From: Podarcis pityusensis
Taxonomy: Eukaryota
Reading direction: 5' to 3' (one strand)
DNA: 64,000 nucleotides
Assembly: GCA_964106645.2 (NCBI GenBank)
Contig: OZ067044.1
The notes under the pieces were generated by a model that had not been told where the DNA came from, made no database searches, and was given only the letters and a program-made list of their open reading frames with translations. Shown piece after piece: positions 38,531 through 64,000 of this stretch (positions are counted from its first letter, which is position 1; every line of letters starts with the position of its first letter). The position numbers and the translations under genes were made by a program.

Positions 38531-38701
38531 TATCGTATTGTTTTATTGCTATGGCCGATGGCTGACGCAAATGAAGATTCATTCATTCATTCATTGTGTG
38601 AGTGAACCTCATTCCACACAAGCATACCTCACTTAGCACTTTGTTGAATCCCATCCTTAAAAATTAAATATTAGAAAACAAATTCCCAACAGTGTTCTCA
38701 C

Positions 38702-41125
38702 CTGAACCCCATGTTGACTTTCACCTGCATGACTGGGGACACCTTCAGAATCATTGGAACTCCTTGGATTCACCTGAGTGTTAGGAGGCTCCACAGAGAA
38801 AACAGGAAACAGGGGCCTGAGAAACCGGAACTCGCTGTTCAGAGACCCACCAGCTAAGCACACCTCATAGTTGTAAGCCTGGGATAGAGATCCAGCACCA
38901 GAATCCGCAGAGTTCTCCTGGGAATCAGGTCCCACCGGGAAATTGGCTGTGGAGTTGTAGGTTCCTATGAACTTTTCACGTTTCTGCAACTTGATTACAA
39001 CAAAGGCCACTACAGAAATGAGAAAGATGCTTGAGATGGCAGCCAAGCAGATGATCAAATACATCGTCAGGCTGGGGTCTTCCTCCTCCACTGTTTCCTC
39101 CTTTGGGAGAGCCACACTTTTCAGATAAGGGTCAGAGAAGCCGTCCACTAGAAGGATTCTGAGCGTGGCAGAGGTGGACTGGGGAGGATGGCCATTGTCT
39201 CGGACCACCACAATCAGATTCTGCTTGAAGCTGTCTCGGTTGCTGACCGGCCTCAGGGTGGTCACTTCTCCATTCTGGGCCCCCACCGTGAACAGACCCG
39301 GCTCTGTGGCCTTCAGCAGTTGGTAGGAAAGCCAAGAGTTCTGTGCAGAATCCCTGTCCACAGCCACCACCTTGGTGACCAGGTAGCCAGTCTCTGCCCC
39401 TCGGGGAACCAGGTCATTCGAGGGGGAAGTGCCATTCTGGAGAGGGTAGAGGATGAAGGGGGCATTGTCATTTTCATCCACGACCTGAACGCGGATGGGA
39501 ACTTCGGAGCTCAGTGGAGGGGAACCTGAATCCACAGCCCTCACCGTCACATGGCAATCTTGTACTTCCTCATAATCCAGAGACCGGATGGCATACAGGT
39601 TCCCCGTTTCAGAGTTGATGGAGATGTAAGAGGATGTGGGGCCATCATTGACCTTCCCAGGCAAAAGCGAGTAGGTCACTTTGGCATTCTGCGCTGTGTC
39701 CAGATCAACAGCATGGACGAAACCGATCAGAAGACCAGGAATATTGTTTTCTCTTAACTGCATTTCATAGAATGTCTTTTCAAACACTGGAGGGTTGTCA
39801 TTGACATCTGAGATTTGCACATGAAGTATTCTTGTGGAAGTGAGTCTGGGAGAGCCCCTGTCCATGGCTGTAATGGTGATGTTATACTCAGAGGCTTGTT
39901 CTCTGTCCAGTGGTTGTTGGGTTACCAGCTGGTAATAGTTGTTCTCTGTGGGTTTGAGCACAAATGGCAGATTTACTTCAGTGGTGCAGGCAGTTCTGCC
40001 ACTGTCTCCAGAGTCCACATCTGTGACACTGAAGAGGGCCACCACTGTGTCTGGGGGAGAGTCCTCAGGTAAGGGACTGGTGATGGATGTGATTGTAATC
40101 TCTGGAGCATTGTCGTTCTCATCCTCAATCTCTACAATGACTTTACAGTAAGCAGAAAGGCCTCCTCCGTCTGTAGCTCTGATGTTCATCTCATAATTTG
40201 TGTTTTCTTCATAATCAATTATACCTGAGATAGTAAGTTCCCCAGTATTTTTATTTAACCTGAATGGTCTCTGCACATTTTCTGGCACTTGGCTAAATGA
40301 GTAAGTGATTTCAGCATTGGAACCAATATCCTTGTCTCTGGCTTCAACTCTTGTGACTAATGTACCCAATGGGCTGTTTTCCATCAGTTTTTCCTGGTAC
40401 ACAGATTTATTAAATAGAGGAGCATTATCATTGGTGTCCAGAACATCTATGATGATTTGTGCTGTTCCAGTTTTGTGGGGTATTCCTCCATCAGCAGCTG
40501 ACAGAATTAGGAAAAGCTTTGCTTCCACCTCACGGTCTAATGGTTTCTCCAATACTAGGTCTGCATATTTAGTACCATCACTGTGACTCTGCACATCCAA
40601 CCTAAAATACTTATTAGGACTAAGTGTGTAATTCTGAACAGTATTTTTTCCTTTGTCTGAATCTTGAGCTCTCTCCAAAGGGAATACAGTATTTATGTGA
40701 GTTTGCTCAGGTATTTCAAAAATAAATTGATCTTTCGAGAATTTGGGGGAATTATCATTCACATCCTCTATTTGAACTTCAATTCTATATAGCTTCAATG
40801 GATCTTCTAGCACAATTTCAGAGAGCAGAACACAATGGTCATTCTGACCACAGAGAGCCTCTCGATCTATCCTATCCTTTAATATCATGTTGCCAGAATG
40901 AGGATCCAGCTGGAAATACTGCTTGCTGCTCTTAGAAACCAGCCGGGCTCTCCGAGCAGACAGCTCCTTTGCATCCACTTTCAAATCTTTCAGCACATTA
41001 GCCACCAAGGACCCTGTTTTCCTTTCCTCTGGCACTGAATATTGGATGGAATTGCATATTGCCCCATACATGCAGAGAGACAGAAAGAAAAAAGTCACTT
41101 GCCTGTTCCTGTTATTCATTTCCAT
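38702..41125 (-). CDS. PCDHB: Protocadherin beta-like exon, subfamily A (A1, last beta exon); 808 codons to the donor, unspliced stop at 38657
   Basis: Beta signatures PFILYPLQNGTSP, LLVDGFSDPYL and SLSQAYNYEVCLAGGSLNSEFRFLRP. Likely ATG at 41125 (MEMNNRNRQV). Donor CAG|GTGAGA. Confidence 0.93.
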
Positions 41126-41327
41126 TGCTCCAGATTCACTCAAGACAGATTGAACAACAGAAAAATATGTTAGCTGTATCCCTTTGCTGTATTTATTCCT
41201 GAAAATGCACACCGCTGTCTCCCTCCTCCTGATTTTTTTTGCAATGAAGACCTGTATCTCTTTTGCTTCCAGATTGTTTTGCCCTTGTCTATGCTTTCCA
41301 GAGATTAATCTTTTAAGAATATGTGCT

Positions 41328-41370
41328 GTGCAATGGCACCATCTTGTGTTTGAAATACATATAACTGCAA
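41328..41370 (-). promoter_or_regulatory. CTCF-like promoter element, beta-A type
   Basis: Minus strand AAACACAAGATGGTGCCATTGCAC; conserved upstream of all three A exons. Confidence 0.7.
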
Positions 41371-44300
41371 TCTTTGTCAGTTAGCTGGTCCTCACCCCTT
41401 ACTATTAATATCTATACAAAGCTCCTTATAGAGAAAGATATGGATGCAGATCTTGGGGTTTGCAGTTAATGTGAGCCTGTTTGTGAAGGTGAATAAATAA
41501 CATTGACCCCATATTAACTGGAAGGTATGGAATGTGTATACAAATTCATTATATGAACATGGAATTTTGAACACAGCTCAGGCCATCACTCAACTAAAGC
41601 CAGCTAATGTAAACTAACCTCTGGATACATTTCACACATTAATGAGACAATATCTGAAAAATACAAACAATTGCCAACAATGGAGGCTGGCATGTTAAGG
41701 CAAATGGGGTACTGCCCCATCCACCTCTCTGTCTTGATTCTTACATACTACCAGTTCTGGAGGTGGCACTGCTCCTCACATGCTATCATTAGTTCTGGCT
41801 CCACCTACTGTTGGTCTCCCTTCCTTCTGCCCTACCAGTCCCAATAGATATGGTGGTGTTAGCTGTATATATGGGTGGCACTGTGCAAGGAGGGTAGAGG
41901 TCGCAAGCAGGAAATTTAAGTTAGTCATGCTTTACCTGGTGCTCTGTTAATCCCACATGGTGTCAGAATGGAGACTATCTATGTTCCCTGCAGTGTTCTG
42001 ACAGCCTCACAAAACAGAAAGGTAGTCACAGGTTAACACTCAGAGAATACTAGGAGGCCCAGCTACTGCAGCCACAGTGTTTATCTCTCAAAATAACAGG
42101 CAAAAGAGAGGCCTGGAAACTGAGAGTACCTGCAGGAAGGCTCTGCTGGTGCAGCTACTGACGGGGTATCACTCCAGAAAAGGAGGAAAGAAAACAGAGG
42201 CAGAGGCGAGACCTGGAACTAAGAGAGTCTACAATGACCCATAAAGGTGAGTCCAAGCCATCTATGACCCCTCTGAACAGGGCTACTCCATCCCTGGTTG
42301 ATTTCCACATTGCATGAATAGTTTGATTTCCAGCACCCTGAAGGCTGGCCATTTTAGATAAGCAGATTCCAAAGGTTCTTCCAGACATCTGGACACAGGA
42401 ACAGCGAGTAACACTCTTTTGTGCACTATGGAGCCAGCAGTAGGGAATATAATCCTCTCAAGGAGACTCACAAATGTCCAGATATAACTGTTTTAAAACA
42501 GACAAAGAAGAGCTAGAGAAGCACTTTCTACCTCATTGCAAAGTAATGTTTGAGCCGGTCTAATTCCACTCTCGCAAGCAGGATGGTCAAAGAAAGAAAA
42601 CTTGGGAGTCAGCAGGAGGTTGCAGACTTAGACACTACAAACTAACTCATGTGATGTTAACCTGGCAAAGGGAAGGAATACAGCAGGTAACCCAAAGACT
42701 GCCCTTAGTGTGGCAAGTCACCCTACAGCAAGAAGACAGTCAGACATTATCAGAAAAGGGGGCATTATGCTGCAGTGTGCTGTTCTAAACACATCATAGC
42801 ACTGGTTCTCCAAAAAGACCACCTGGGAGCCATTGGTAATGGTCAGAATGAGCCTCCATGGATTACCACCATTGTCTTGGGAGAGCTTTCAATTGAATTT
42901 AAAATTGTCATGGGGCAGGTGTCAAAGTGACCCCAACTTCATTGTACAGGAAGCTAAAGGCTTCTACTTCGACTTTATTTTGCTCTCAGAAGGGGTTGGG
43001 TCTTTCTGCAGAGTAAAGCATTCTGGGGGAGGTTGCCCAGGAAAATGCCTGTACCACATCTACTTTTCAGAAACAGCTAAACATCCTTTTAAAATGTTGG
43101 AATCCTAGAAGCCAAGACCCCAGTTTTGGGCAAGCACTCTTTGGTGAGAGAACCTCAGCAGAGATTTAGCATCACACAACAAGCAGCAGAGAAAAACATG
43201 GAAATTTAAGGAAAACCTTAAAACGTGCCCTTCAAGTAAGTCCCCAAATGTCCAGTTTTCAAAGTTCTTTTCACTGTATCCCATTTCCCTAGCATATCAA
43301 CCACATGTTTTGCAAGCCATAACATGGTTTACTAGCAAAACTCTTCAGAGGTCAGATTCATGTGTTTTTCCATACAGCAGCCAGAAAAGATGCACAATCA
43401 GTTAAAACATTGCTTAGCTATAAAAGGTAAAAGTTTCTAAATATTGATAGACACAAACACTAGTTTGAGCCTCTGTTCTGGTATGAAACAAAAAAGCCTG
43501 GTTAAAACCATGAGGGTAGAATGACCTCCTTACAACAAAGGCTTCTTGACCCATTTCCTCTCCAGGTGAGCAGTGATGACTGCCTGGCAGGACAGCTTAC
43601 TCTACGGTTTAACCCCTTCATGTGCCATCTAGATTCAAACATCCTAGAGGTATATGTGACTGGAACCCTACCATCAAAAACACTACTTAAAAATTAAGAG
43701 AGAATGACTAACCACTAGAGCTGTATGTTGGCTCTGCATGAAGCACAAATTCTGAGGTGTTCGTGGGTGATTTGGGTGAGATTTTCACACACAATCAAGT
43801 GTGTCATTAACAAGGTGTCTGGAGTTGGAGCAGAACTGCTTAAAGTCCTGAGTCTCAGACTGCTACTTTGTTTTTAGTTTTTTTATAAAAGAAGAAGTCA
43901 GTAACTTAGTCATCTATAAAGCAAAATGTTGAGGGAATGTTCTAGGGTTTATTAGGCAGATATGGAGGTGTTGCAATTGCTAAGGTCACTTTGTTACGTT
44001 GCTAAGCAATCAGAAGTAAGGAATCGGGAGGCATTCTCTCTATCTTTGCTTTCTTTCAACAGGAACAGCCTGCAGTGAGAGGTACAGCAATGGGAATAAA
44101 GCAAATTATGGCTAGCACCTTTAGTATATAGTATGTCTATCTTACAAATATTGATCAGGGCAGGCCTTTTCTTTTATGGAAATACAATTATGGATAAAGC
44201 TTAACCCTTTCACATTCTGTCTGTCAGGCAACTTATTACCTGTGTGATATACTTTTGAACCTTTTACTTAAGAACAGCAGCTTGTGACATTATGAATGCT

Positions 44301-44429
44301 GAAAACATGTTGAGACTGAATTGGGACTTGAACTGGACAAATTCATTTTGTAAAGGGACAAACTGGAACTAGAACTAATCCCTTTTTGGACAGGATAAAG
44401 TAGAACTTTCCAAGCACTGCTAGTAACAA

Positions 44430-44525
44430 GTTCCTGCTTGGCAGGGGGTTGGACTCGATGGCCCTTGTGGTCTCTTCCAACTCTATGATTCTATGATTCT
44501 ATGATTCTATGATTCTATGATTCTA
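44430..44525 (+). mobile_element. CR1 LINE 3' terminus with (ATTCTATG)n tail
   Basis: GGGGGTTGGACTCGATG...TTCCAACTCTATGATTCTATG with about five octamer repeats, diagnostic of CR1 3' ends. Confidence 0.88.
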
Positions 44526-45354
44526 ACATGTAGAAGCTTAAATCAATTACAGAAAAATAGCATTAATTCATAAATTAATCTGGTTAAAAAGTAGGTGTAA
44601 TCTAGAAACTTCCTTTATATCTTAATACCTAAATTATTAAATTTTCCTTTTCATATCAGGTTATTGAATGTGGTCAGCTTCTTCATTAAACAGATATAAA
44701 TTATATATGTTCTTTGATATCAAGTATGCAGTGATGTTAACCAATTAAATTTTAGATATTGACAGTTTGGAAGAACTGAAACACTTTTTTAAAAATTCTG
44801 AATTCCTGGCACAGTTCTAGGATTGAGAGAGGTGTTACTGCACTTTCCTGGTAAACAAGGCAAGAGTTTTTAAAGTTTAAGAGAATATTGTAAGCATTCA
44901 GAAAAGGTGGGATCATAAGACTGATGTACAGGAGAGAAATGGAGAAATCATTGGGTTCTAGGTCACTTGGTCCTACGTATTTGGATATTGGTCCTACCCA
45001 CTTCGGCCTTGGAGGCTTGGCCAGAGAAGAATGTGGTCCTTGACAGGAAGATCCCCAACCCCCTGTTCTACAGAGAAGTAAAAAAAAAAAAACAAACCAA
45101 TGCCCTGAAAAATAAAAATAACAGAAGATCAAAGAAAGGTTCAAGGAACTAAAATGGCTCCAAGTGAAGAGAGTAGGTGGGTTAAAAAAGAAAGGCAAGA
45201 ACAAATATTATTAAATGGCTATAAAAGAGGCATTTCAAAATTTACAAACTGCAACATAAAGAATTAACCAAAATAGGATGATGTGAAGAAACAGATAAGA
45301 AAAGTGACTTATGATGTAATATGCTTTCTCCAACTATAATTACTAATCGCTCAC

Positions 45355-47775
45355 CTGTTTCCCTGATTCTGTTTTCCCCGCCTGGTCAGGAATATCTTGG
45401 GAAGCAGACGGAGGGGTCTGGTTCACATTGAGGTTTGGGTCCCCCACAGAAAAAACAGGAATGAGGGGCCTGAGGAACCTGAACTCGCTGCTCAAGGACC
45501 CACCGGTTAAGCAAACATCGTAGTGGTAACTCCTGGAAAGCGACCCGCTCTGAGAATCGCCACAGTTCTCTGGGATGTCGGGTCTGGCAGGTGGGAAGTG
45601 AGGAGGGGCAGCGATAAAACTTTCCCTGGGATCCCTCCTGCAGATCTTGATGGCAGCAAAGGAAACAATGCAAACGAGGAACACAAAGGAGACTGCAGCC
45701 AGGCAGATCACCAGATACAAGGTCAAGGTCCCATCTTCTTCGTGTTCCTCTTTACTGACCTCCACAGCCTTCATATAAGGATCCGAAAAGCCACCCACGG
45801 GAAGGACATGGAGCATGGCAGTGCTGCTCTGGGGAGGGAGCCCGTTGTCCCTGACCACTATCAGGAGTCTCTGCTTGCTGGTGTCTCGCTCGCTCAGGGC
45901 TCTCCTGGTTCTCACTTCCCCATTCTGGGCTCCGATGCTGAAAAGACCAGGGTCTGTGGCCTTCAGCAGCTCATAGGAAAGCCACGAGTTCTGGCCAGAA
46001 TCTCCATCCACAGCCACCACCTTGGTGACCAGGTAGCCGGCCTCCACCGACTTGGGGACCAGCTCATTGCAGGGGGATGTGCTGTTCTGAAGAGGGTAGA
46101 GGAAGAAGGGAGCGTTGTCGTTTTCGTCTAGGATTACGACTCGGACAGTAACTTCTGAGCTGAGGGGAGGAGACCCTCCATCTGTAGCCCTCACCGTCAC
46201 TTTGAAATCTTTGATCTGCTCATAATCCAGAGATCGGAGGGCATACAGATTTCCACTTTCAGAGTTGACTGAGATGTAAGAGGCCACAAGGCCATCAGTA
46301 ACCTTCCCAGGCAAAAGGGAGTAGGTGACCTTGGCATTCTTCTCGGTGTCCAGATCAGCAGCATGGACTGAGCCAATGAGCAGTCCTGGAATATTGTTTT
46401 CCCGTATCTGCATTTCACATGAAGACGTTTCAAATACTGGAGGGTTGTCATTGATATCTGAGATCTTAACATTAATCATTCTTGTTGAAGTGAGCCTGGG
46501 GGAGCCTTGGTCAACGGCTGTGATGGTGATATTATATTCCGGGACCTTCTCTCTGTCCAGGTAGCTTTGGACCACAAGCTGGTAATAGTTATTCATAGTG
46601 GATTTTAAGACAAAGGGAAGGTTTGTCTCCACAGAGCACACGGTTCTGCCATTGTCTCCAGAGTCTCGGTCTGTGACTGTGAAGAGAGCCACAAGTGTCT
46701 CCAGGGGAGAATCCTCTGCCAGAGGACTAGTGATGGATACGATGGACACTTCAGGGACATTGTCATTCACGTCTTCAATCTCTACCAGGACCTTGCAGTG
46801 ACCTGAAAGATCCCCTCCATCTGTTGCTCTGATGCTCATGCTGTAACTGGTTTCTTTTTCAAAATCAATTTGTCCCAAAACAGTTATTTCCCCAGTGAGA
46901 TCATTTAAGTGGAAGCAACGGTGTATTTTTTCAGGTACCCGATCAAATGAGTACGTTATTCGTGCATTTGAACCAAAATCTGAATCTGTAGCTTCCACTT
47001 TGGAGACCAGGGTGTCCCTAGGGCTGTTTTCCTTTAACCTTACTTTATATTCAGAATGAGTAAACTGAGGGAAATTATCATTGATGTCCAAAACCTTGAT
47101 ATTTATCTGAACTGTGCCTGTTCTCTGTGGCTCTCCTCCATCTGCAGCTGTGAGAGTCAGTCCAAACTCTGCTGCTTCTTCCCTGTCTAGAGGTTTCACC
47201 AAAATAAGGTCCAAATATTTGTTTCCACTTTCATCACTTTTTACTTGGAGCCAGAAATGCTCATTGGAACTCAGAGTGTAGTTTTGAACGTTATTTTTAT
47301 CCAAATCTGTATCTTGTGCAGATTCCAAAGGGAATTGGGTGTTGATAGGGACATTCTCTGGAATATATAGCTTGAATTCCTTTTTTGAGAATTTGGGAGT
47401 ATTGTCATTTACATCTTTTATCTCTATCTCTATACTGTAGATCTTTAAGGGGTTTTGGAGCACAATTTCAGAGAGCAGCAAGCAAGGATCAGTCTCACCA
47501 CACAAAGCTTCCCTGTCTACTTTATCATTTATCAGCAGATTCCCAGTGTGGGTATCAAGGTGGAAATACTGCTTTGTGCTTTTGGACACTAGCTGGGCTC
47601 TGCGAGCAGACAGCTCCCCTGTTCCCAGTTTCAAATCCTTCAGCACATTAGCCACCAGAAATCCACTTTTCTTTTCTTCAGGCACAGAATAGCGTATTGA
47701 GATACACATCACTCTAGACACAGAGAATAAGAGGAAGAGATACAGACCTTGCCTGTTCCTGATGCAGTCTTCCAT
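45355..47775 (-). CDS. PCDHB: Protocadherin beta-like exon, subfamily B (B1); 807 codons to the donor, unspliced stop at 45343
   Basis: PFFLYPLQNSTSPCNELVP and SLSRSYHYDVCLTGGSLSSEFRFLRP motifs. Likely ATG at 47775 (MEDCIRNRQ). Donor CAG|GTGAGC. Confidence 0.93.
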
Positions 47776-48028
47776 GGTTTCTCTCCCTTCTTGGTAAGAT
47801 ATATAGGTTCCGGCCAAAAGACCAATTTTTCGGTTTTCTCCTGTGGCTCCCTGTGCTGTTGTGTAAATTGTTTCTTTTTCCTCCTGTCGTGGTCAATGCT
47901 TGCTCCCTTGAATTTTGTATTTCCTTTCTAGAAAAGGAGTCTGCACCTTTCTAGTTCAGTTATCTCTGTTCATAGCTTCCCCTCAGTGCTGCTACAAAGC
48001 AATATTGTGAATAAAAAATAATGTGCTT

Positions 48029-48052
48029 GCCAATATTGCCACCTTGTGGTTC
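48029..48052 (-). promoter_or_regulatory. CTCF site, beta-B type, with adjacent CCAAT/ATTGG
   Basis: Minus strand AACCACAAGGTGGCAATATTGGC, a near-consensus CTCF core; same element at 57781. Confidence 0.8.
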
Positions 48053-48353: not shown

Positions 48354-50777
48354 CTGACATCTCAGACGCGTTTCTTCTTCATTACAAGACACTTCTTGGG
48401 ACCCACTGGAACTCCTTGGATTCACCTGAGTGTTAGGAGGCTCCACAGAGAAAACAGGAAACAGGGGCCTGAGAAACCGGAACTCGCTGTTCAGTGACCC
48501 ACCAGCTAAGCACACCTCATAGTTGTAAGCCTGGGATAGAGATCCAGCACCAGAATCCGCAGAGTTCTCCTGGGAATCAGGTCCCACCGGGAAATTGGCT
48601 GCAGAGTTGTAGGTTCCTATGAACTTTTCACGTTTCTGCAACTTGATTACAACAAACGCCACTACAGAAATGAGAAAGATGCTTGAGATGGCAGCCAAGC
48701 AGATGATCAAATACATCGTCAGGCTGGGGTCTTCCTCCTCCACTGTTTCCTCCTTTGGGAGAGCCACACTTTTCAGATAAGGGTCAGAGAAGCCGTCCAC
48801 TAGAAGGATTCTGAGCGTGGCAGAGGTGGACTGGGGAGGATGGCCGTTGTCTCGGACCACCACAATCAGATTCTGCTTGAAGCTGTCTCGGTTGCTGACC
48901 GGCCTCAGGGTGGTCACTTCTCCATTCTGGGCCCCCACCGTGAACAGACCCGGCTCTGTGGCCTTCAGCAGTTGGTAGGAAAGCCAAGAGTTCTGCGCAG
49001 AATCCCTGTCCACAGCCACCACCTTGGTGACCAGGTAGCTAGTCTCTGCCCCTCGGGGAACCAGGTCATTCGAGGGGGAAGTGCCATTCTGGAGAGGGTA
49101 GAGGATGAAGGGGGCATTGTCATTTTCATCCACGACCTGAACGCGGATGGGAACTTCTGAGCTCAGTGGAGGGGAACCTGAATCCACAGCCCTCACCGTC
49201 ACCTGGAAATCTTGTACTTCCTCATAATCCAGAGACCGGATGGCATACAGGTTCCCCGTTTCAGAGTTGAGGGAGATGTAAGAGGATGTGGGGCCATCAT
49301 TGACCTTCCCAGGCAAAAGCGAGTAGGTCACTTTGGCATTCTGCGCTGTGTCCAGATCAACAGCATGGACCGAATTGATCAGAAGACCTGGAATATTGTT
49401 TTCCCTTAATTTCATTTCATAGAATGGCTTTTCAAACACTGGAGGGTTGTCATTGACATCTGACACTTCAACATGAAGTATTCTGGTGGAAGTGAGTCTG
49501 GGAGAGCCTCTGTCCGTGGCTGTGATGGTGATGTTATACTCAGAGGCTTGTTCTCTGTCCAGTGGTTGTTGGGTCACCAGCTTGTAATAGTTGTTCTCTG
49601 TGGGTTTGAGCACAAATGGCAAGTTGACTTCAGTGGTGCAGGCAGTTCTGCCACTGTCTCCAGAGTCCACGTCTGTGACACTGAAGAGGGCCACCACTGT
49701 GTCTGGGGGAGAGTCTTCAGGTAAGGGACTGGTGATGGATGTGATGGTAATCTCTGGAGCATTGTCGTTCTCATCCTCAATCTCTACAATGACTTTACAG
49801 TAAGCAGAAAGGCCCCCTCCATCTGTGGCTCTGATGTTCATCTCATAATTTGTGTTTTCTTCATAATCAATTGTTGCTGCAGTAGTAAGTTCCCCGGTGT
49901 GTTTATTTAATTTGAATATTCTCAACATATTTTCTGAGACTTGCCTGAATGAATAAGTGATATGTGCGTAGGAACCAAGATCCCTGTCAGTGGCTTCAAC
50001 TTTGGTGACCAGTGTACCTGGTGGAATGTTTTCGAGTAGTTGCACATTATATACAGATTTATTAAAGTGAGGGGCATTGTCATTGGTGTCCAGAACTTGA
50101 ACAATAATTTGTGTACTTCCGCTTCTTCTTGGGATCCCTCCATCAACAGCTGACAGCATTAATGTAATCTGTGGCTTCTCCTCACGGTCTAGCGGTTTCT
50201 CTAACACCAATTCCGCATGTTTGCTACCATCACTGTGACTTTTCACATCCAGCCTAAAATGTTCATTTGGACTAAGGGTGTAGTTCTGAACAGCATTTTT
50301 TCCTTTGTCTGAATCTTCAGCTTTTTCCAAAAGGAATCGGGTATTCGTGGGTGTCTGCTCAGGTATTTCCAAGACAAACTGTTTTTCAGAGAATATGGGG
50401 GAATTATCATTCACGTCCTCTATTTGAATCTCAATTCTGTGCAGCTGCCATGGCTTTTCCAGCACCATTTCACAAAGCAGAACACAAGGGTCATTCTGAC
50501 CACACAGGGACTCTCGGTCTATTTTATTTTTTATTATCACATCCCCAGACTGGGGATCCAGCTCAAAATACTGCTTGGCAGTCTTAGAAAGCAGCTGCGC
50601 TCTCCGAGCAGACAGCTCCTTTACTTCCATTTTCAAATCTTTCAGCAGATTAGCCACCACAGACCCACTTTTCCTTTCCTCAGGCACTGAATAGCGGAAG
50701 GACTCACACACCCCACCACAGGTACAGAGACAGATAAAGAAGAGACAAACTTGCCTGCTATAACGGAGGATTTTCAT
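48354..50777 (-). CDS. PCDHB: Protocadherin beta-like exon, subfamily A (A2); 808 codons to the donor, unspliced stop at 48330
   Basis: Within ORF 48330..51086; the first ATG preceding a signal peptide is at 50777 (MKILRYSRQV). Donor CAG|GTGAGG. Confidence 0.93.
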
Positions 50778-51033: not shown

Positions 51034-51060
51034 GTGCAATTGCACCACCTTGTGTTAGAA
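51034..51060 (-). promoter_or_regulatory. CTCF-like promoter element, beta-A type
   Basis: Minus strand TAACACAAGGTGGTGCAATTGCAC. Confidence 0.7.
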
Positions 51061-52122: not shown

Positions 52123-52123
<1 letters not shown>

Positions 52124-55131: not shown

Positions 55132-57552
55132 CTGTTCCACTGGCTTCCTGCTCTCCAAAGCATCAGGAATATCTTGGGAAGCAGACGGAGGGGTCTGGTT
55201 CACATTGAGGTTTGGGTCCCCCACAGAAAAAACAGGAATGAGGGGCCTGAGGAACCTGAACTCGCTGCTCAAGGACCCACCGGTTAAGCAAACATCATAA
55301 TGGTAACTCCTGGAAAGAGACCCGCTCTGAGAATCGCCACAGTTCTCTGGGATGTCGGGTCTGGCAGGTGGGAAGTGAGGAGGGGCAGCGATAAAACTTT
55401 CCCTGGGATCCCTCCTGCAGATCTTGATGGCAGCAAAGGAAACAATGCAAACAAGGAACACAAAGGAGACTGCAGCCAGGCAGATCACCAAGTACAAGGT
55501 CAAGGTCCCATCTTCTTCGTGTTCCTCTTTACTGACCTCCACAGCCTTCATATAAGGATCCGAAAAGCCACCCACGGGAAGGACATGGAGCATGGCAGTG
55601 CTGCTCTGGGGAGGGAGCCCGTTGTCCCTGACCACTATCAGGAGTCTCTGCTTGCTGGTGTCTCGCTCGCTCAGGGCTCTCCTAGTTCTCACTTCCCCAT
55701 TCTGGGCTCCTATGCTGAAAAGACCAGGGTCTGTGGCCTTCAGCAGCTCATAGGAAAGCCACGAGTTCTGGCCAGAATCTCCATCCACAGCCACCACCTT
55801 GGTGACCAGGTAGCCGGCCTCCACCAACTTGGGGACCAGCTCATTGCAGGGGGATGTGCTGTTCTGAAGAGGGTAGAGGAAGAAGGGAGCGTTGTCGTTT
55901 TCGTCTGTGATTACGACTCGGACAGTAACTTCTGAGCTGAGGGGAGGAGACCCTCCATCTGTAGCCCTCACCGTCACTTTGAAATCTTTGATCTGCTCAT
56001 AATCCAGAGATCGGAGGGCATACAGATTTCCGCTTTCAGAGTTGACTGAGATGTAAGAGGCCACAACGCCATCAGTGACCTTCCCAGGCAAAAGGGAGTA
56101 GGTGACCTTGGCATTCTTCTCAGTGTCTAGATCAGCAGCACGGACTGAGCCAATGAGCAGTCCTGCAATATTGTTTTCCCGTATCTGCATTTCACATGAA
56201 GTCTTTTCAAATACTGGAGGGTTGTCGTTGACATCTGAGATCTGAATGTTAATCACTCTTGTTGAAGTGAGCCTGGGGGAGCCTCGGTCAGTGGCTGTGA
56301 TGGTGACATTATACTCTGAGACCTTCTCTCTGTCCAAGGGACTTTGGACCACAAGCTGGTAATAATTATTCATAGTGGATTTTAACATAAAAGGAAGGTT
56401 TGCCTCCACAGAGCACATGGTTCTGCCATTGTCTCCGGAGTCTTGGTCTGTGACTGTGAAGAGAGCCACAAGTGTCTCCAGGGGAGAATCCTCTGCCAGA
56501 GGACTGGTGATGGATATGATGGACACTTCAGGGACATTGTCATTCACATCCTCAATCTCTACCAGGACCTTGCAGTGACCTGAAAGACCCCCTCCATCTG
56601 TTGCCCTGATGTTCATGTCATACCTGGTTTCTTTTTCATAATCAAGCTGACCAGAAAGAGTGATTTCCCCCGTGATTTCATTTAAATAAAAGAAACTGTA
56701 TATTTTTTCCGGTGCCTGGTGGAATGAGTAGGTGATCTGTGCATTTGAACCAAAATCCAAATCTGTAGCTTCCACTTTGAAGACCAGAGTGCCCTGTGGG
56801 CTGTTTTCTTTTAACCTAGCTTTGTATTCAGGCTGGGTAAACAGAGGAAAGTTGTCATTATTGTCAAGAACATCAATATTTATTTTAACTGTTCCTGTTC
56901 TCTGTGGCACTCCTCCATCTACAGCCATGAGGGTCAATCCAAAGTGTGAGTCCTTCTCCCTGTCCAGTGGCTTCTGCAGAACAAGATGCACATATTTCCT
57001 TCCATCCTTGTTGCTTTCCACATATAGTCGGAAATGCTCATTGGGACTGAGTGTGTAGTTTTGGATACTGTTTTCTCCTAAGTCCTCATCTTGGGCAGAT
57101 TCCAAGAGGAACTGTGTGTTTGTAGGAACCATCTCTGGAATTTCCAGATCAAATTTATCTTTAGAGAATTTGGGAGTATTGTCATTCACATCTTCTATCT
57201 TCATTTCTATACTGTAGATATTTAAGGGGTTTTGAAGCACAATTTCAGACAGCAGCATGCAAGGATCAGTCTGGCCACATAAAGCTTCTCTGTCTATTTT
57301 ATCATTTATCAGCAAATTCCCAGAGTGAGTATCAAGGTGGAAATATTGCTTTGTGCTTTTGGACACTAGCTGGGCTCTGCGAGCAGAGAGCTCCCCTTTT
57401 CCCAGTTTCAAATCCTCCAGCACATTAGCCACCAAAAACCCCTTTTTCTTTTCTTCAGGTACAGAATAGCGAAATGAAATGCAGACTGTTTTCAACACAA
57501 AGAGAAAAAGCAAAAGATACAGACCTTTCATCTTTCTGAAGCTATCATTCAT
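55132..57552 (-). CDS. PCDHB: Protocadherin beta-like exon, subfamily B (B2); 807 codons to the donor, unspliced stop at 55123
   Basis: ORF 55123..57561; first ATG at 57552 (MNDSFRKMKGLYL). Donor CAG|GTGAGA. Confidence 0.93.
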
Positions 57553-57780
57553 GGTTTCCACCTCTTCCAGAGTGTTAAAGCACTGACCAAAGCTTCTTTC
57601 ATCCTCTGATCATCTTTGCAGCTTGATGAATAATCTTTGTGCTGCAATTTTTATTGTTTTTCATTCTCCTGAGCCTCATATCTTCACACCAGCATCTACC
57701 TCCCGTATCATTGCTATACTGCCTCTTCAAGGTTTCAACAAATGCAACAATACAATATTCTCAGTGTCCATGAAAATGTT

Positions 57781-57804
57781 GGCCAATTCTGCCACCTTGT
57801 GGTT
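57781..57804 (-). promoter_or_regulatory. CTCF site, beta-B type, with adjacent CCAAT/ATTGG
   Basis: Minus strand AACCACAAGGTGGCAGAATTGGCC. Confidence 0.8.
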
Positions 57805-58107
57805 AAATAAAAATAAAACCAATATTGCACTTATACAAGAGATACACTTGTGTGGAAATCTCCATTTTATTCCTAATAATCTGTTATGTGGTTTAATTGT
57901 CAGCAGCTAATATATACATAGGATTATTAAGAATTTCCAAAATCAATGGATGAATGAAAAAAAAGAGAGAGAGAACAACATTCCCCCATTTACAATTCAT
58001 TGTGCTCATGCTTAAATGCCTCTGTAATAACTAGATTATAGTACAGAGAGGGAACTAATCATAAACATACCTTGCAATGTTAAAAATAAAGAAAAGTATA
58101 TTCTCAC

Positions 58108-60531
58108 CTGAACCCCATGTTGACTTTCACCTGCATGACTGGGGACTCCTTCAGAATCACTGGAACTCCTTGGATTCACCTGAGTGTTAGGAGGCTCCAC
58201 AGAGAAAACAGGAAACAGGGGCCTGAGAAACCGGAACTCGCTGTTCAGAGACCCACCCGCTAAGCACACCTCATAGTTGTAAGCCTGGGATAGAGATCCA
58301 GCACCAGAATCCGCAGAGTTCTCCTGGGAATCAGGTCCCACCGGGAAATTGGATCCAGAGTTGTAGGTTCCTATGAACTTTTCACGTTTCTGCAACTTGA
58401 TTACAACAAACGCCACTACAGAAATGAGAAAGATGCTTGAGATGGCAGCCAAGCAGATGATCAAATACATCGTCAGGCTGGGGTCTTCCTCCTCCACTGT
58501 TTCCCCCTTTGGGAGAGCCACACTTTTCAGATAAGGGTCAGAGAAGCCGTCCACTAGAAGGATTCTGAGCGTGGCAGAGGTGGACTGGGGAGGATGGCCG
58601 TTGTCTCGGACCATCACAATCAGATTCTGCTTGAAGCTGTCTCGGTTGCTGACCGGCCTCAGGGTGGTCACTTCTCCATTCTGGGCCCCCACCGTGAACA
58701 GACCCGGCTCTGTGGCCTTCAGCAGTTGGTAGGAAAGCCAAGAGTTCTGCGCAGAATCCCTGTCCACAGCCACCACCTTGGTGACCAGGTAGCCAGTCTC
58801 TGCCCCTCGGGGAACCAGGTCATTCGAGGGGGAAGTGCCATTCTGGAGAGGGTAGAGGATGAAGGGGGCATTGTCATTTTCATCCACGACCTGAACGCGG
58901 ATGGGAACTTCTGAGCTCAGTGGAGGGGAACCTGAATCCACAGCCCTCACCGTCACATGGAAATCTTGTACTTCCTCATAATCCAGAGACCGGATGGCAT
59001 ACAGGTTCCCCGTTTCAGAGTTGATGGAGATGTAAGAGGATGTGGGGCCATCATTGACCTTCCCAGGCAAAAGCGAGTAGGTCACTTTGGCATTCTGCGC
59101 TGTGTCCAGATCAACAGCATGGACCGAATTGATCAGAAGACCAGGAATATTGTTTTCTCTTAACTGCATTTGATAGAATGGCTTTTCAAACACTGGAGGG
59201 TTGTCATTGACATCTGAAATTTGAACATGAAGTATTCTTGTGGAAGTGAGTCTGGGGGAGCCCCTGTCCGTGGCTGTGATAGTGATGTTATATTCACTGA
59301 CTTTTTCCCTGTCCAGTGGTTGTTGGGTCACCAGCTGGTAATAGTTGTTTTCTGTGGGTCTGAGCACAAATGGCAGGTTGACTTCAGTGGTGCAGGCAGT
59401 TCTGCCACTGTCCCCAGAGTCCACATCTGTGACACTGAAGAGGGCCACCACTGTGTCTGGGGGAGAATACTCAGGTAAGGGACTGGTGATGGAAGTGATT
59501 GATATCTCTGGGGCATTGTCATTCTCATCTTCAATGTCTACAATTACTTTACAGTAAGCTGAAAGCCCTCCTCCATCTGAGGCTTTGATGTGCATCTCAT
59601 AGCTGGTGATTTCTTCATAGTCAGTCATCCCTACAACAGTGAGTTCCCCAGTGTGTTTGTTTAACTTGAATGATCTCAACACATCTTCTGGAACTTCACT
59701 GAAGGAATAAGTGATGTGAGCATTGGTACCAGAATCCCTGTCAGTGGCTTCCACTTTTGCGACCAACGTATCCAATGGGCTGTTTTCCATTAGTTTCACA
59801 TTGTACTCAGATTGTGGAAACTGAGGTACATTATCATTAGCATCCAGAATATCGATGAGAAGCTGTGCTGTTCCAGTTCTTTTTGGGATCCCCCCATCGA
59901 TAGCTGACAGAGTAAGATAAATGTGTGGATTCACCTCACGGTCTAGTGGTTTCTCTAACACCAATTCTGCGTATTTGCTACCATCACTGTGACTTTTCAA
60001 ACTCAGCCTAAAATGTTCATTAGGACTAAGGGTGTAGTTCTGAACAGCATTTTTTCCTTTGTCTGAGTCTTGAGCTTTCTCCAAAGGAAATCTGATATCC
60101 ACAGGAGTCTGCTCAGGTATTTCAAGAAGGAATTGATTTTTAGAGAATTTGGGGGAATTATCATTCACATCCTCTATCTGAACTTCAATTCTGTGTAGCT
60201 GCAATGGCTTTTCCAGCACAATTTCAGACAGTAGAAGACAAGGATCATTCTGACCACACAGGGACTCCCGATCTATTTTATCCTTTACTGTCACATCCCC
60301 AGAATGAGGATCCAGCTGGAAATACTGCTTGGAGCTCTTAGAAACCAGCCGGGCTCTCCGAGCAGACAGCTCCTTTGCATCCACTCTCAAATCTTTTAGC
60401 ACATTTGCCACCAGAAACCCATTTTTCTTTTCCTCTGGCACTGAATAGCGGAAAGACTCACACATTGCTATGCATGCACAGAGACACAGGGAAAAAGACC
60501 AAACTTGCCTGATCTTGAGGGGCATTTCCAT
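58108..60531 (-). CDS. PCDHB: Protocadherin beta-like exon, subfamily A (A3); 808 codons from ATG 60531 (an in-frame upstream ATG exists at 60564), unspliced stop at 58036
   Basis: ORF 58036..60564; same beta-A signatures. Donor CAG|GTGAGA. Confidence 0.93.
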
Positions 60532-60770
60532 TCTCCCAGCCTCTCCTCCTGAAATGCAAGGCATTGTCCTCTTCTCTATTCCAAGGCGTGTCTCTTCTTA
60601 ACTGTATTTATCTTCTGAAAGTGACACTGTGTCCTGCTTATTCCTACTGAAATTTCTGAAGACTGGCTTGCAATAGGGGTCTGCTGTTTTTCCTGTGCTG
60701 ATTCCTTTGTCTAATGGCTACAGCTCTTGAGGAGAGCAACTGCTGCTCCCCAATTTCCTTCTTTTATCTT

Positions 60771-60800
60771 GTGCAATACCACCACCTTGTGTTTGAACTA
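60771..60800 (-). promoter_or_regulatory. CTCF-like promoter element, beta-A type
   Basis: Minus strand AAACACAAGGTGGTGGTATTGCAC. Confidence 0.7.
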
Positions 60801-62415
60801 TGTTATGGCGTTACAAAAACCAAAAGATTTTCCAGAATAAGAGCTGGTAAACATGAGCATCCGTGTGGAGATGCAAGAGAACAGCCACCCCAATGGAACA
60901 TAAACCCCATATTCCCAGCTTGCTTTCTTTTTAGAACTTATAGAACCTGAGATAGGAAGCAAAATGTACAGACCCCATGTCTTCCCATTTTTGTGAGAAG
61001 TTACCTATTTCCTCCTTTAAGTGTTTTCCTTACCCCTGCCCACCTGAAAAAATCCTGTGCACAACCAACTTGCAAAGATTACAATATTTCAGAATGCATA
61101 TCCCCTTCACCTGTGTTATATACCAGGGCCTGTGCTCCTTGCTCATTCTGCTTGCCAATGCCCTTACATTTCCCCAACATTAACCCCCAAGAGCTTCCCC
61201 TTCTCAATGCAACTATTAAGCTTGCCTTTCACCTTCCAACACAATTTTTGGGGTCACTCCTCTTCGGCAGTCCCAATTTGTAGCCAACTTTGTAATCCAC
61301 TTTTTACCTTCGTCCCATATCCATGCCTCCCCCCTACTATTGTGCAACACCCCCTTCACACAAACCACTCCCTTGCTAACTTGCTACATCTTCTGCCAGC
61401 TATTGTGCATCTTTTTCACCTTCTCTCCAATAATGAAACCACCAACACAGGGGACAAGACAGAATCTAACAGCAAAAAGCTAACACAACAGAGCCTTCCC
61501 AACTCCCTTCTCACTGTAGTCAAACCCTGGTTTAAACCACCACTTCACCCACCTTCAGGGTCTCGCCTGCTCAGGCTACTCAAACCTCTGCCATTGTTTA
61601 AAATCACCACTTTCCCTCTCTGTTTTCCCCCATTCCTGCTTTATTCAAATGTCTGCTGTTGCATAAAACCACGATTTTTCAGCTTCCCTCCATCCATGCT
61701 TTACTCAAACCGGTCTGCTGATTAAAACTGCCCCTGCTCCTCTTTCAGTTTTTCTCCCTTCTTGTTCCTGTGTCCTTGGCCATTGCTCTTGTGCAACCTG
61801 CCTTCTTGCACCCAAAACTGAGGGGGACCACTGCAAGATGTGTGTGTGTGACATCATGCACATGACACATGTAGCGCATGTAATATCATGCAGCGGGTTC
61901 ACATTGTTCATGTGTGACATCATATGCGCAGCTTGTGCACAACATTACATCATGAGGAGGAGTCGAAGCATGGAGCCCAATGTAATGTGGCTTCAATAGC
62001 TGGCAGCTCCACCTCTCCCATACTCAGGAGGAATTTACGCCATGCTCGCATCCACACTCAACTTCCTCTGCCGCGTAAACATTGAGGGGGGTCTAGCCCC
62101 CTCTCAACAGATTTTGAGGGGGCAGAAGACACCTCGGCCCTATAGAGTTGGCACGCCTGCTGGCTGCTGATCAGAAAAACCTTAAAATGGGAACCATATG
62201 TGAGTTGTAGGATTTATATGCATCTAAGTCATACTTGGAGTACGCTCATTTAAATCAATGAATCCCATGGGTCTACTCTGAGTATGAAGTAGTCGAATAC
62301 AAGCATTGAAACTTCAATCCTGCTCTCATAATTATTATGTTTACATTTTTTTCAGGCTGCTGCAACCTTCCCAATGTGTAGTCTCCACCCCATTATCATT
62401 TATACATCATATCTT

Positions 62416-62887
62416 GGAAACTACAACTAATCCAGGATGCGGCAGCTAGACTGGTGACTGGGGGTGGCCGCCGGAATCATATAACTCTGGTCCTAAAGGA
62501 TCTTCACTGGCTCCCAGTGTGTTTCTGAGCACAAATCAAAGTGTTGGTGCTGACCTTTAAGGCCTTAAATAACCATGGCCCAGTATACTTGAAGAAGCGT
62601 CTCCTCCCCCATTGCTCAGCCCAGACACAGAGGTCCTCCTGAGGGTCTTCTGCTGGTTTCCTCACTGCGAGAACTGAAGTTACAGGGAACCAGGCAGAGG
62701 GCCTTCTTGGCAGTGGCACCCTGCCTGTGTCAGATGTCAAGGAGATAAAGAACTACACAACTTTTAGAAGACATCTGAAAGCAGCCCTGTTTTGGGAGGT
62801 TTTTAATGTTTGATGTTTTATTATGTTTTAAAATATTCTGTAAGCAGCCCAGAGTGGCTTGGGAAATCCAGACGGATGGACGGGGCA
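62416..62887 (+). mobile_element. L2-type LINE 3' fragment
   Basis: Encodes KLQLIQDAAARLVTG...HITLVLKDLHWLPV (L2 ORF2 C-terminus), followed by a 3' UTR shared with 3333-3589. Confidence 0.85.
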
Positions 62888-63484
62888 TCCTAACCCCAAC
62901 CCTTAACATATTAGCAGTTCAAATGGCAAAACAGAACACAATGAGAGTCCAGATTGAGTTTGTTTGAAATGAAAACTGTTTTAAAAGTCTGGGTCAATAA
63001 AAAAGCTCTCAATCCAGCACCAAAAAGGCCATGAAGATGGTTCTGGGCAAGTCTCCCTTGGGAGGCCACTCCGCAGATGGGTGCAACTACCAAGAGTCCC
63101 TATAAACAATTTATATAACCGGGGAGTCTGTCTCATAAAGGGCCCCTGTGTGCATGTAAGCTGTCTTAGACACATTAGGGGTATATTCTAGTACACACAG
63201 CTGTATATGCAGCAACTGTGATTAGTACATAGCATTTTGAGCTAAGTTTAATACAGAGAAGACTCAACAATAAGGGAACAAAGGAACATAAGAAGAATAG
63301 GATGTAGAGTAAGAAGGAAACAATTCTGACATGGATTTGAAATAAAATAAAAAACTGAAGCCCTGTCTCTGTAGTCACTGTATCTTATCAACAAAGAACA
63401 ACGGAAGAAAAACATCTGATGTTATTCATAACCAAGCAAAAGGCATTATTAATCACAACTTAACTCACTGGCATAATCCCTCAC

Positions 63485-64000
63485 CTTTTTCTCTGATTCT
63501 TTTTCTTCCACCAGATTAGGAATGTCTTGGGAAGCAGACGGAGGGGCCTGGTTCACACTGAGGTTTGGGTCTCCCACAGAAAAAACAGGAATGAGGGGCC
63601 TGAGGAATCTGAACTCGCTGCTCAAGGACCCACCGGTTAAGCAAACGTCGTAGTGGTAACTCCTGGAAAGCGACCCGCTCTGAGAATCGCCACAGTTCTC
63701 TGGGATGTCGGGTCTGGCAGGTGGGAAGTGAGGAGGGGCAGCGATAAAACTTTCCCTGGGATCCCTCCTGCAGATCTTGATGGCAGCAAAGGAAACAATG
63801 CAAACAAGGAAAACAAAGGAGACTGCAGCCAGGCAGATCACCAAATACAAGGTCAAGGTCCCATCTTCTTCGTGCTCCTCTTTACTGACCTCCACAGCCT
63901 TCATATAAGGATCCGAAAAGCCACCCACGGGAAGGACATGGAGCATGGCAGTGCTGCTCTGGGGAGGGAGCCCGTTGTCCCTGACCACGATCAGGAGTCT
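63485..64000 (-). CDS. PCDHB: Protocadherin beta-like exon, subfamily B (B3), 3' part only (end of EC6, TM, cytoplasmic region); unspliced stop at 63449
   Basis: Near-identical to the B1/B2 3' ends. Donor AAG|GTGAGG at 63485/63484. Confidence 0.92.

What the first reader, a model, noticed from the sequence alone, without database searches (positions are those of the whole stretch)
38657..63490. All six beta exons end in a strong phase-0 splice donor: candidate beta-to-gamma-constant splicing system
Seen: each beta exon has (C/A)AG|GTGAG at an equivalent position (38702, 45355, 48354, 55132, 58108, 63485). In the five complete exons this is exactly 808 (A) or 807 (B) codons from the ATG, in the same phase 0 as the gamma donors. 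The donor is kept even where the preceding residues differ between paralogs. Read-through tails are unconserved, 2-23 aa long and AT-rich like introns; A1 and A3 match up to GTGAGAA and then diverge. Known: mammalian Pcdh-beta has no constant exons and is treated as single-exon, whereas gamma variable exons splice to three downstream constant exons. Inference: in this lizard the beta exons may act as extra variable exons of the gamma constant region, giving beta ectodomains a gamma intracellular domain and making beta+gamma one splicing unit. No candidate constant exon was recognised in the beta-gamma gap. Donor-like sites may also persist in mammalian beta genes, so the novelty would lie in actual usage.
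Basis: partly seen in the sequence, partly recalled or inferred. Interest (0 to 1): 0.8.

Follow-up and report, generated by a model that had tools for sequence, protein, structure and literature searches.

The report
Protocadherin-beta cluster with own constant exon
The six lizard protocadherin-beta exons do end in real splice donors, but the evidence says they join a small beta-specific last exon lying just downstream (a recycled scrap of an old beta exon, shared by lizards, geckos and turtles) and not the gamma constant exons, which contradicts the published view that beta genes have no constant exon.

Summary
All six beta variable exons (minus strand) end in (C/A)AG|GTGAG in phase 0, 808 or 807 codons from the ATG.

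It has a pyrimidine tract plus CAG acceptor, 39 codons in phase 0, a TAG stop, about 2.3 kb of 3'UTR and an AATAAA signal at 33788-33783.

- **Gene models:** its 39-residue product is the shared C-terminus of predicted "protocadherin beta-16-like isoform X.." models in lacertids, iguanians, a teiid, an anguid, a cordylid, an amphisbaenian, geckos and turtles.
- **RNA from a close relative:** depth is about 136 over this exon against 9 in the intron. The contig breaks exactly at the acceptor. Stranded raw reads show minus-strand coverage confined to the exon.
- **Conservation:** between lizard and turtle only this exon is conserved (76% of bases; dN/dS 0.26).
- **Origin:** the exon is an in-frame relic of a beta variable exon at the EC5/EC6 junction.

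No junction-spanning read row was displayed, so the splice itself is strongly inferred rather than seen. Splicing to gamma constant exons is not supported as the main route. The papers I could search state that beta clusters, the anole's included, lack constant exons.

The parts
36063..36179 (-). Coding part of the beta-specific constant (terminal) exon: 39 codons, phase 0, followed by the TAG stop at 36062-36060
   Evidence: tblastn of the shared tail of the Podarcis muralis model P0005 gives 97.6% identity, E 2e-25. The sequence was read. There is no Pfam family match. Against the turtle Chrysemys it is 76% identical in bases with dN/dS 0.26.
36180..36200 (-). 3' splice site: pyrimidine-rich tract ending in CAG
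   Evidence: Sequence read. In frame it reads F-L-C-P-L-Q, which matches the F-L-Y-P-L-Q of beta variable exons. The RNA contig of depth 135.7 ends at 36182, three bases into this CAG.
33769..36059 (-). 3'UTR of the terminal exon, with AATAAA at 33788-33783 and transcript end near 33769
   Evidence: AATAAA scan. X1 contigs of depth 104-136 cover 33769-36182, and depth is 0 at 33501-33700. Stranded raw RNA reads cover 33901-36300 in one orientation only.
36045..36197 (-). Relic of a beta variable exon (EC5/EC6 junction), which contains the constant exon in the old reading frame
   Evidence: tblastn of the window's own beta exons, residues about 558-609: 31-36% identity, E 2e-6 to 1e-5. In the turtle the same relic aligns over 58 codons at 43% identity, E 9e-13. 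phmmer of the tail against 1.84 billion representatives finds protocadherin EC6 segments, E 4e-16 to 7e-5.
38702..41125 (-). Beta variable exon 1 (type A, 808 codons); donor CAG|GTGAG with last exon base 38702; intron to the constant exon is 2522 nt
   Evidence: Pfam gives Cadherin_2, 5 Cadherin stretches and Cadherin_C_2. The ortholog P0014 is modelled as spliced to the tail. RNA depth is about 48 in the exon against 11.9 across the donor.
45355..47775 (-). Beta variable exon 2 (type B, 807 codons); donor CAG|GTGAG at 45355
48354..50777 (-). Beta variable exon 3 (type A, 808 codons); donor CAG|GTGAG at 48354
   Evidence: The ortholog P0018 carries the tail.
55132..57552 (-). Beta variable exon 4 (type B, 807 codons); donor CAG|GTGAG at 55132
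58108..60531 (-). Beta variable exon 5 (type A, 808 codons); donor CAG|GTGAG at 58108
   Evidence: The closest models, P0005 and P0008, carry the tail.
63485..64000 (-). 3' part of beta variable exon 6 (type B, cut by the window end); donor AAG|GTGAG at 63485; intron to the constant exon is about 27.3 kb
41337..41349 (-). Promoter-region motif MCACAAGRTGGYR upstream of beta exon 1. The same motif occurs at 48037-48049, 51043-51055, 57790-57802 and 60780-60792, that is 210-280 bp upstream of each complete beta ATG.
   Evidence: 5 matches against 0.01 expected, all upstream of beta exons. That it resembles a CTCF/CSE site is my reading; its activity was not tested.

Best explanation
The beta array is a variable-exon/constant-exon transcription unit of its own.

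Mechanism:
- Each roughly 2.4-kb beta exon has its own upstream promoter motif. It encodes six cadherin repeats, the membrane span and a short cytoplasmic stretch, and it ends in a phase-0 donor.
- Transcripts started at any beta exon are spliced in cis to one shared terminal exon at 36179-33769 (minus strand), which lies between the last beta exon and the first gamma exon.
- That exon adds a common 39-residue C-terminal peptide, a stop codon, a common 2.3-kb 3'UTR and a poly(A) site. The poly(A) site ends beta transcription before the gamma array.

Origin: the exon is an old beta variable exon that decayed. The codons for F-(I/L)-L-Y-P-L-Q at the EC5/EC6 junction became the pyrimidine tract plus CAG acceptor. 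The next 39 codons are still read in the old frame, and a leucine codon became the TAG stop. The exon is shared by squamates and turtles, so it dates at least to their common ancestor.

Shown here: the sites, frame, conservation, homology, RNA depth step and strand.

Inferred: the actual exon-exon joins, taken from gene models and from the contig break, and any function of the peptide. The peptide probably acts as a conserved intracellular docking or phospho-regulated tail.
For: - Exon anatomy: acceptor, 39 codons in phase 0, TAG stop and AATAAA.
- Shared tail: 67 predicted models in hand, with 23 distinct tail sequences, end in this peptide and always at the C-terminus. They come from lacertids, Rhineura, Elgaria, Hemicordylus, Anolis sagrei, Sceloporus, Pogona, Salvator, five gecko genera and several turtle genera.
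- Shared end coordinate: 8 coding models in Podarcis muralis, 15 in Anolis sagrei, at least 18 in the gecko Heteronotia and 2 in Chrysemys (a third, of 830 residues, ends 100 bases earlier) start at different variable exons and stop at one coordinate.
- RNA, contigs of run X1: depth is 135.7 over 34686-36182 and 104-121 down to 33769, against 8.98 over the intron 36156-38269. The break falls three bases past the exon start. That is what is expected if exons ending in CAG are joined there. Depth is about 48 in exon 1 against 11.9 across its donor.
- RNA, raw reads: two stranded bulk runs cover only 33901-36300, first mate on + only, which means minus-strand RNA. They give zero depth over the unique intron parts. 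The single-cell run has 8-10 reads at 36120-36168 and none beyond 36300.
- Constraint: lizard against turtle, only window 36186-36043 aligns (75.7% over 144 nt). dN/dS is 0.26 against Chrysemys and 0.10 against P. muralis. Window to gecko and window to turtle are each 25 of 39 residues identical, and 10 columns are invariant across 20 tails.
- Donors elsewhere: turtle beta exons end in GAG|GTGAGT in phase 0, and P. muralis orthologs keep CAG|GTGAG.
- Relic origin. The spacing between the Y/C-P and P-R residues is 12, as in beta exons, against 13 in gamma exons.
Against: - No row for a joint 36179<->38702, or for loose ends at 36180, was displayed. The tables were filled by a multi-copy element at 38287-38533, and 9 joints and 412 loose ends were not shown.
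- Run X1 is only guessed to be RNA, and it comes from a close relative that differs by about 2% of bases, not provably the window's species.
- Raw RNA depth is low, 0.2-5x.
- All protein models are automatic predictions. No transcript-derived protein was found.
- Some models of the same species read through the donor as single-exon genes, and about a quarter of the RNA depth crosses donor 1 unspliced.
- No snake, bird or crocodilian tail was seen.
Confidence: 0.87

Rival explanations
1. One reading: beta variable exons splice across the gamma array to gamma constant exon 1, giving beta ectodomains a gamma intracellular domain as a regular product.
For: - Beta and gamma donors share phase 0 and a similar consensus.
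- Both arrays lie on one strand, with beta upstream of gamma.
- A 2020 review says beta exons probably arose from gamma variable exons (PMC7811963).
Against: - A competing acceptor with a stop codon and poly(A) signal lies between the beta donors and every gamma exon.
- RNA depth over that exon is about 136, against about 48 for beta exon 1 (the only beta exon laid), and it ends at the poly(A) site.
- None of the lacertid, other squamate or turtle beta models listed shows a tail of gamma-constant length.
- By an earlier unchecked note, the gamma constant region is more than 267 kb beyond the window.
Confidence: 0.05
2. The beta exons are single-exon genes as in mammals. The donors are unused relics, and the proteins end in the short read-through tails.
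For: - Several database models read through the donor, ending for example in Q-V-R-I or Q-V-R-V.
- A read-through contig of depth 11.9 crosses donor 1.
- The literature describes anole beta genes as lacking constant exons (PMC2764143).
Against: - The donor 8-mer is kept in six paralogs while both flanks diverge to 0.48 and 0.34 identity.
- It is also kept in P. muralis and, as GAG|GTGAGT, in turtles.
- The read-through tails are unrelated and 2-23 codons long.
- RNA depth falls about four-fold at donor 1 and rises fifteen-fold at the acceptor.
Confidence: 0.04
3. The 36179-33769 exon belongs to a separate gene or non-coding RNA. Its attachment to beta exons in database models is an annotation artefact spread by homology between species.
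For: All tail-bearing proteins are automatic predictions. No junction read row was displayed.
Against: - The open frame is kept for 39 codons with dN/dS below 1 from lizard to turtle, and the conserved island stops within 17 bases after the stop codon.
- The boundary of RNA coverage coincides with a consensus acceptor, not with a start site. The contig break lies three bases upstream, as expected for CAG-ended partner exons.
- The phase matches the beta donors.
- Coverage sits on the same strand as the beta exons.
Confidence: 0.03

Closest known systems
[quoted passage not shown]
   Same: - Tandem ~2.4-kb variable exons, each with an upstream conserved motif.
- A phase-0 donor at the end of each variable exon.
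- One shared downstream acceptor, a common C-terminus and a common 3'UTR.
   Different: - One constant exon of 39 codons, instead of three exons encoding about 125-150 residues.
- No similarity to the alpha or gamma constant domains and no Pfam family.
- The exon derives from a decayed variable exon.
Mammalian Pcdh-beta genes (single-exon, no constant region), and the anole beta subcluster as described by Jiang et al. 2009 (PMC2764143)
   Same: The variable exons are beta-type. The best named hits are protocadherin beta, identity is 53% to a turtle beta against 36-40% to this window's gamma exons, and the exons sit 5' of the gamma array.
   Different: Here the exons keep working-looking donors and share a terminal exon. 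Jiang et al. searched with mammalian constant exons and confirmed splicing by RT-PCR only for delta, alpha and gamma, so a beta-specific exon could have been missed.
Other multiple-variable-first-exon loci such as UGT1A
   Same: Promoter choice selects one first exon, which is then spliced to common downstream exons.
   Different: An unrelated protein family. In UGT1A the common exons encode a large functional domain, not a 39-residue tail.
Exonisation of pseudogene or repeat fragments into new terminal exons
   Same: A decayed coding fragment supplies a cryptic acceptor and an open frame, and is then fixed as an exon.
   Different: The donor fragment is a paralog from the same array and is read in its original frame. 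An extracellular cadherin strand thereby becomes an intracellular C-terminus, kept at least since the lizard-turtle ancestor.

Membership tests
Clustered protocadherin, beta subfamily (variable exons) | One large exon encoding the N-terminal Cadherin_2 domain, further cadherin repeats, the membrane span and the Cadherin_C_2 juxtamembrane segment | tested here: met
   Pfam on exons 1 and 2: Cadherin_2 (E 4e-35 and 2e-33), Cadherin in 5 stretches (E 6e-84 and 3e-82), Cadherin_C_2 (E 4e-21 and 2e-21).
Clustered protocadherin, beta subfamily (variable exons) | Closer to beta than to gamma paralogs | tested here: met
   The closest proteins carrying a protocadherin name are all 'protocadherin beta-..', with mammalian beta hits at 48-49%. 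The turtle beta P0108 is 52-53% identical to the window's beta exons and 36-40% to its gamma exons. No tree was built.
Clustered protocadherin, beta subfamily (variable exons) | Array lies between the alpha and gamma arrays, on the same strand | tested here: inconclusive
   The gamma side is met: gamma-type exons at 5847-29360 lie downstream on the minus strand. The alpha side is outside the window.
Clustered protocadherin, beta subfamily (variable exons) | No constant exon; each gene a single exon (the definition used for mammals and, in print, for anole) | tested here: not met
   A shared terminal exon lies at 36179-33769, with acceptor, frame, stop, poly(A) signal, RNA depth step and cross-species models.
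Variable/constant-exon transcription unit of the Pcdh-alpha/gamma kind | Each variable exon has its own promoter element | tested here: met
   A motif 210-280 bp upstream of all five complete beta ATGs, 5 matches against 0.01 expected. This is sequence only; promoter activity was not tested.
Variable/constant-exon transcription unit of the Pcdh-alpha/gamma kind | Every variable exon ends in a 5' splice site of one phase, matched by a shared downstream 3' splice site | tested here: met
   Six phase-0 donors. A phase-0 acceptor at 36180/36179.
Variable/constant-exon transcription unit of the Pcdh-alpha/gamma kind | Transcripts that join a variable exon to the constant exon | tested here: inconclusive
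   Indirect evidence only. Depth steps from 135.7 to 8.98 and the contig breaks at 36182. Stranded reads are confined to the exon, and 8-10 reads abut the acceptor with none beyond it. The gene models of many species agree. No junction row was displayed.
Variable/constant-exon transcription unit of the Pcdh-alpha/gamma kind | Three constant exons encoding a domain homologous to the alpha or gamma constant region | tested here: not met
   A single exon of 39 codons with no Pfam hit. Its only distant relatives are EC6 segments of protocadherin ectodomains.
   The gamma constant exons are outside the window (note s1-733754) and the one read-laying run was used on 33301-39300. No model with such a tail appears among the listed hits.

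The most novel reading that the evidence does not exclude
The beta constant exon is older than the reptiles: it was already present in the amniote ancestor. Mammalian (and perhaps avian) single-exon beta genes would then have arisen by losing this exon and the donors. That would decide between the two origin scenarios the 2020 review leaves open, and it would mean that beta protocadherins originally carried a common intracellular tail.
Probability: 0.3. Interest if true: 0.7.

Novelty: new variant of a known kind. Interest (0 to 1): 0.62.

Why it matters
Reviews and the only published reptile study state that the beta cluster has no constant exons, so that beta proteins lack any common intracellular part (PMC2764143, PMC4978886, PMC7811963).

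If the exon described here is used as the evidence indicates, three things follow:
- Reptile beta protocadherins do share a conserved 39-residue C-terminus and a common 3'UTR.
- The beta array is a third (in lizards a fourth) variable/constant unit of the locus.
- A constant exon can be born from a dead variable exon of the same array.

This bears directly on the open question of how the beta cluster arose and how it lost, or never had, constant exons. It also gives a short, conserved peptide whose partners can be looked for. The exon is already present in automatic gene models, so the novelty lies in recognising and explaining it, not in raw discovery.

Tried and rejected
- **Fragment search:** a word search with the C-terminal 108 residues of the stored model P0014 (by reference), meant to find transcript-derived fragments crossing the junction, found nothing.
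- **Cluster members:** the members of seven lacertid clusters are all predicted XP or UniProt entries, none transcript-derived.
- **Read laying:** the joint and loose-end tables were filled by a multi-copy element in the intron, so the decisive rows were not shown, and the cap is one call.
- **Anole and gecko DNA:** none could be fetched because the gene ranges exceed 100 kb. Only their gene tables were used.
- **Tail search:** the search of 1.84 billion representatives gave no non-squamate tail. This is not evidence of absence, because the turtle tails surfaced only (clustering at 50% hides them).
- **tRNA scan:** the scan for SINE heads found none.
- **Earlier findings by words:** the search gave nothing for constant or splice.
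- I did not resend typed letters and redid the count from stored files.
- **Joined models:** I built and searched no joined beta-plus-constant model of my own. The exons were searched apart by reference.
Full report
**What is in the window.** Ten long open frames, all on the minus strand, are protocadherin variable exons.
- Gamma-type exons lie at 5847-8288, 12027-14453, 20471-22915 and, broken, at 26581-29360.
- Beta-type exons lie at 38702-41125, 45355-47775, 48354-50777, 55132-57552 and 58108-60531. The 3' end of a sixth is at 63485-64000.
- Pfam gives the expected Cadherin_2, Cadherin and Cadherin_C_2 architecture.
- The closest proteins carrying a protocadherin name are called protocadherin beta. 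A turtle beta protein is 52-53% identical to these exons and 36-40% to the window's gamma exons.
- The window has no N.

**The observation.**
- The pattern MAGGTGAG occurs 14 times against 6.3 expected, and no shuffle reached 14.
- All six are in phase 0, 808 or 807 codons from an ATG.
- The read-through tails are 2-23 codons long and unrelated.
- Around the invariant 8-mer, paralogs are only 0.48 identical on the exon side and 0.34 on the intron side.

**The missing exon.**
- The best hits to beta exon 5 are predicted 'protocadherin beta-16-like isoform X1, X2 ...' proteins of about 845-858 residues from many squamates. That is about 39 residues longer than the exon.
- Their sequences share one C-terminal peptide that begins right after the residue encoded by the donor's CAG.
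- tblastn places this peptide at window 36185-36063 with 97.6% identity, E 2e-25.
- The DNA shows a pyrimidine-rich tract ending in CAG at 36180, 39 codons from 36179 to 36063 in phase 0, and TAG at 36062-36060.
- AATAAA lies at 33788-33783.
- The intron from beta exon 1 is 2522 nt. From exon 6 it is about 27.3 kb.

**RNA evidence (window 33301-39300, four runs of a coded 'organism A').** The RNA comes from a congener or a divergent individual: its contigs differ from the window by about 2% of bases.

Contigs of run X1:
- Depth is 104.7 over 33769-34593, 120.8 over 34564-34710 and 135.7 over 34686-36182.
- Depth is only 8.98 over 36156-38269, the intron.
- It is about 48 over 38754-39300 in beta exon 1, and 11.9 in the contig that crosses donor 1.
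- Depth is zero at 33501-33700, just past the AATAAA.
- The deep contig stops at 36182, three bases beyond the exon start. Those three bases are the CAG of the acceptor, and five of the six beta exons also end in CAG. This is therefore exactly where spliced mRNAs and unspliced RNA begin to differ in a word graph.
- X1 is only guessed to be RNA, but fifteen-fold steps at splice sites are not what genomic DNA gives.

Raw reads:
- The two stranded bulk RNA runs cover the unique sequence only from 33901 to 36300, with first mates on + only. That means minus-strand RNA. They give zero depth at 36301-36900 and 37101-38100.
- The single-cell run has 8-10 reads over 36120-36168 and none past 36300. 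The depth of that bin (3.89 x 200 bases) is about what ten reads ending at 36179 would give.

What is missing: the rows that would show the join itself were not displayed. A multi-copy element at 38287-38533 took the table space, and 9 joints and 412 loose ends were not shown. The splice is thus strongly inferred, not seen.

**Other species.**
- In Podarcis muralis, eight coding models that start at different variable exons all stop at one coordinate (L001). The exon there differs from the window by 4 bases.
- Anolis sagrei has 15 such models over 141 kb, and the gecko Heteronotia has at least 18.
- Searching with a turtle beta protein showed that turtle 'beta-16-like isoform' models (Chelonoidis, Chrysemys, Pangshura, Trachemys, Malaclemys, Gopherus, Dermochelys) end in a clearly homologous 39-residue tail.
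- In the Chrysemys locus the exon has the same acceptor position and the same stop. The first codons after the stop also match (L002).
- Turtle beta exons end in GAG|GTGAGT in phase 0.
- In all, 67 models with 23 distinct tails carry the peptide, always at the C-terminus.
- Ten of 39 columns are invariant. Window to gecko and window to turtle are each 25 of 39 identical, against 6 of 39 (ungapped) for the preceding 39 residues between the P. muralis and turtle models.
- Between lizard and turtle the only alignable stretch, comparing 5.4 kb with 10 kb, is window 36186-36043.
- dN/dS is 0.26 against turtle and 0.10 against P. muralis. These are small samples.
- No snake, bird or crocodilian tail was seen. 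The bird models in hand end in a different conserved C-terminus. Because squamates and turtles bracket all living reptiles and birds, the exon was present in their common ancestor.

**Origin.**
- The tail also hits the start of EC6 in every variable exon of the window.
- With the window's own beta exons as queries, the alignment runs from 36197 to 36045. It crosses the acceptor (F-L-C-P-L-Q against F-L-Y-P-L-Q) and the stop codon.
- In the turtle it spans 58 codons at 43% identity, E 9e-13.
- An exhaustive profile-free search of 1.84 billion representatives found one short reptile fragment. All the other hits were EC6 segments of protocadherins.
- Spacing and the L-Q pair match beta exons, not gamma exons.
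- The exon is therefore a piece of a dead beta variable exon, still read in its old frame. Its acceptor was made from the codons of the EC5/EC6 linker.

**How it most likely works.**
- Promoter choice at one beta exon is followed by cis-splicing to the first available acceptor, the beta terminal exon. Each exon has a private motif 210-280 bp upstream (5 matches against 0.01 expected).
- The poly(A) site of that exon ends the transcript before the gamma array.
- The products differ in ectodomain and share a 39-residue intracellular end and a 2.3-kb 3'UTR.
- The function of the peptide is inferred only from its conservation. Its first eight residues carry a basic-Ser and acidic-Ser pattern that would suit kinases. 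This is speculation.

**Comparison with what is known.**
- The papers I could search say that beta clusters lack constant exons. The anole study says so too. It looked for constant exons with mammalian queries and confirmed splicing only for delta, alpha and gamma.
- A 2020 review leaves open how beta lost its link to constant exons.
- Further searches found no description of a beta constant exon. Only open-access papers are covered, so prior description elsewhere remains possible.
- The automatic gene models already contain the exon.

Beta-to-gamma splicing is not supported as the main route, but rare hybrids cannot be excluded.

- I made and searched no joined exon model of my own. The exons were searched apart by reference, and one stored database model was searched in part by reference.

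Noticed in passing
window 38287-38533: A ~247-bp element with 26-bp terminal inverted repeats (38287-38312 against 38533-38508) sits in the intron between beta exon 1 and the constant exon. RNA runs pile up on it at depths of 60-215 in the raw-read runs (tens of thousands in X1's summed contig depth), with loose ends at both termini, so it is a multi-copy MITE-like transposon. It crowded out the splice-junction rows.
   Followed up: partly
window 34500-34900 and 36900-37100: Two more stretches have several-fold excess RNA depth on both strands: one inside the 3'UTR of the constant exon and one in the intron. They have no second copy in the window and are probably dispersed repeats.
   Followed up: partly
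window 8493, 14658, 29545 (about 185-205 bp upstream of gamma ATGs): Gamma exons 1, 2 and 4 carry a CGCT box at -204, -205 and -185. The beta exons have none within 400 bp and carry a different motif (MCACAAGRTGGYR). The gamma exon at 20471-22915 lacks an exact CGCT.
   Followed up: partly
window 12027-12040 and 20471-20500: Two gamma donors depart from the others: CAA|GTGAGT for the exon at 12027-14453 and CAG|GTATGT for the exon at 20471-22915.
   Followed up: no
proteins P0201, P0222, P0236 (sea turtles), P0192, P0206 (Mauremys): Some turtle beta models join the same donor to other short tails, for example one beginning L-S-H-K-V-A. This suggests alternative terminal exons in turtles, or mis-predictions.
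   Followed up: no
protein P0117 (Hemicordylus capensis isoform X16): This model joins the constant tail to an upstream point inside the variable cytoplasmic segment (after Y-N-Y-E). That implies an alternative internal donor about 50 codons before the usual one.
   Followed up: no
proteins P0150, P0153, P0154, P0158, P0166, P0172, P0190 (birds): Bird beta-like models lack the reptile tail and end in their own conserved C-terminus (..L-S-F-N), from tinamou to songbirds. Whether birds lost the constant exon was not examined.
   Followed up: no
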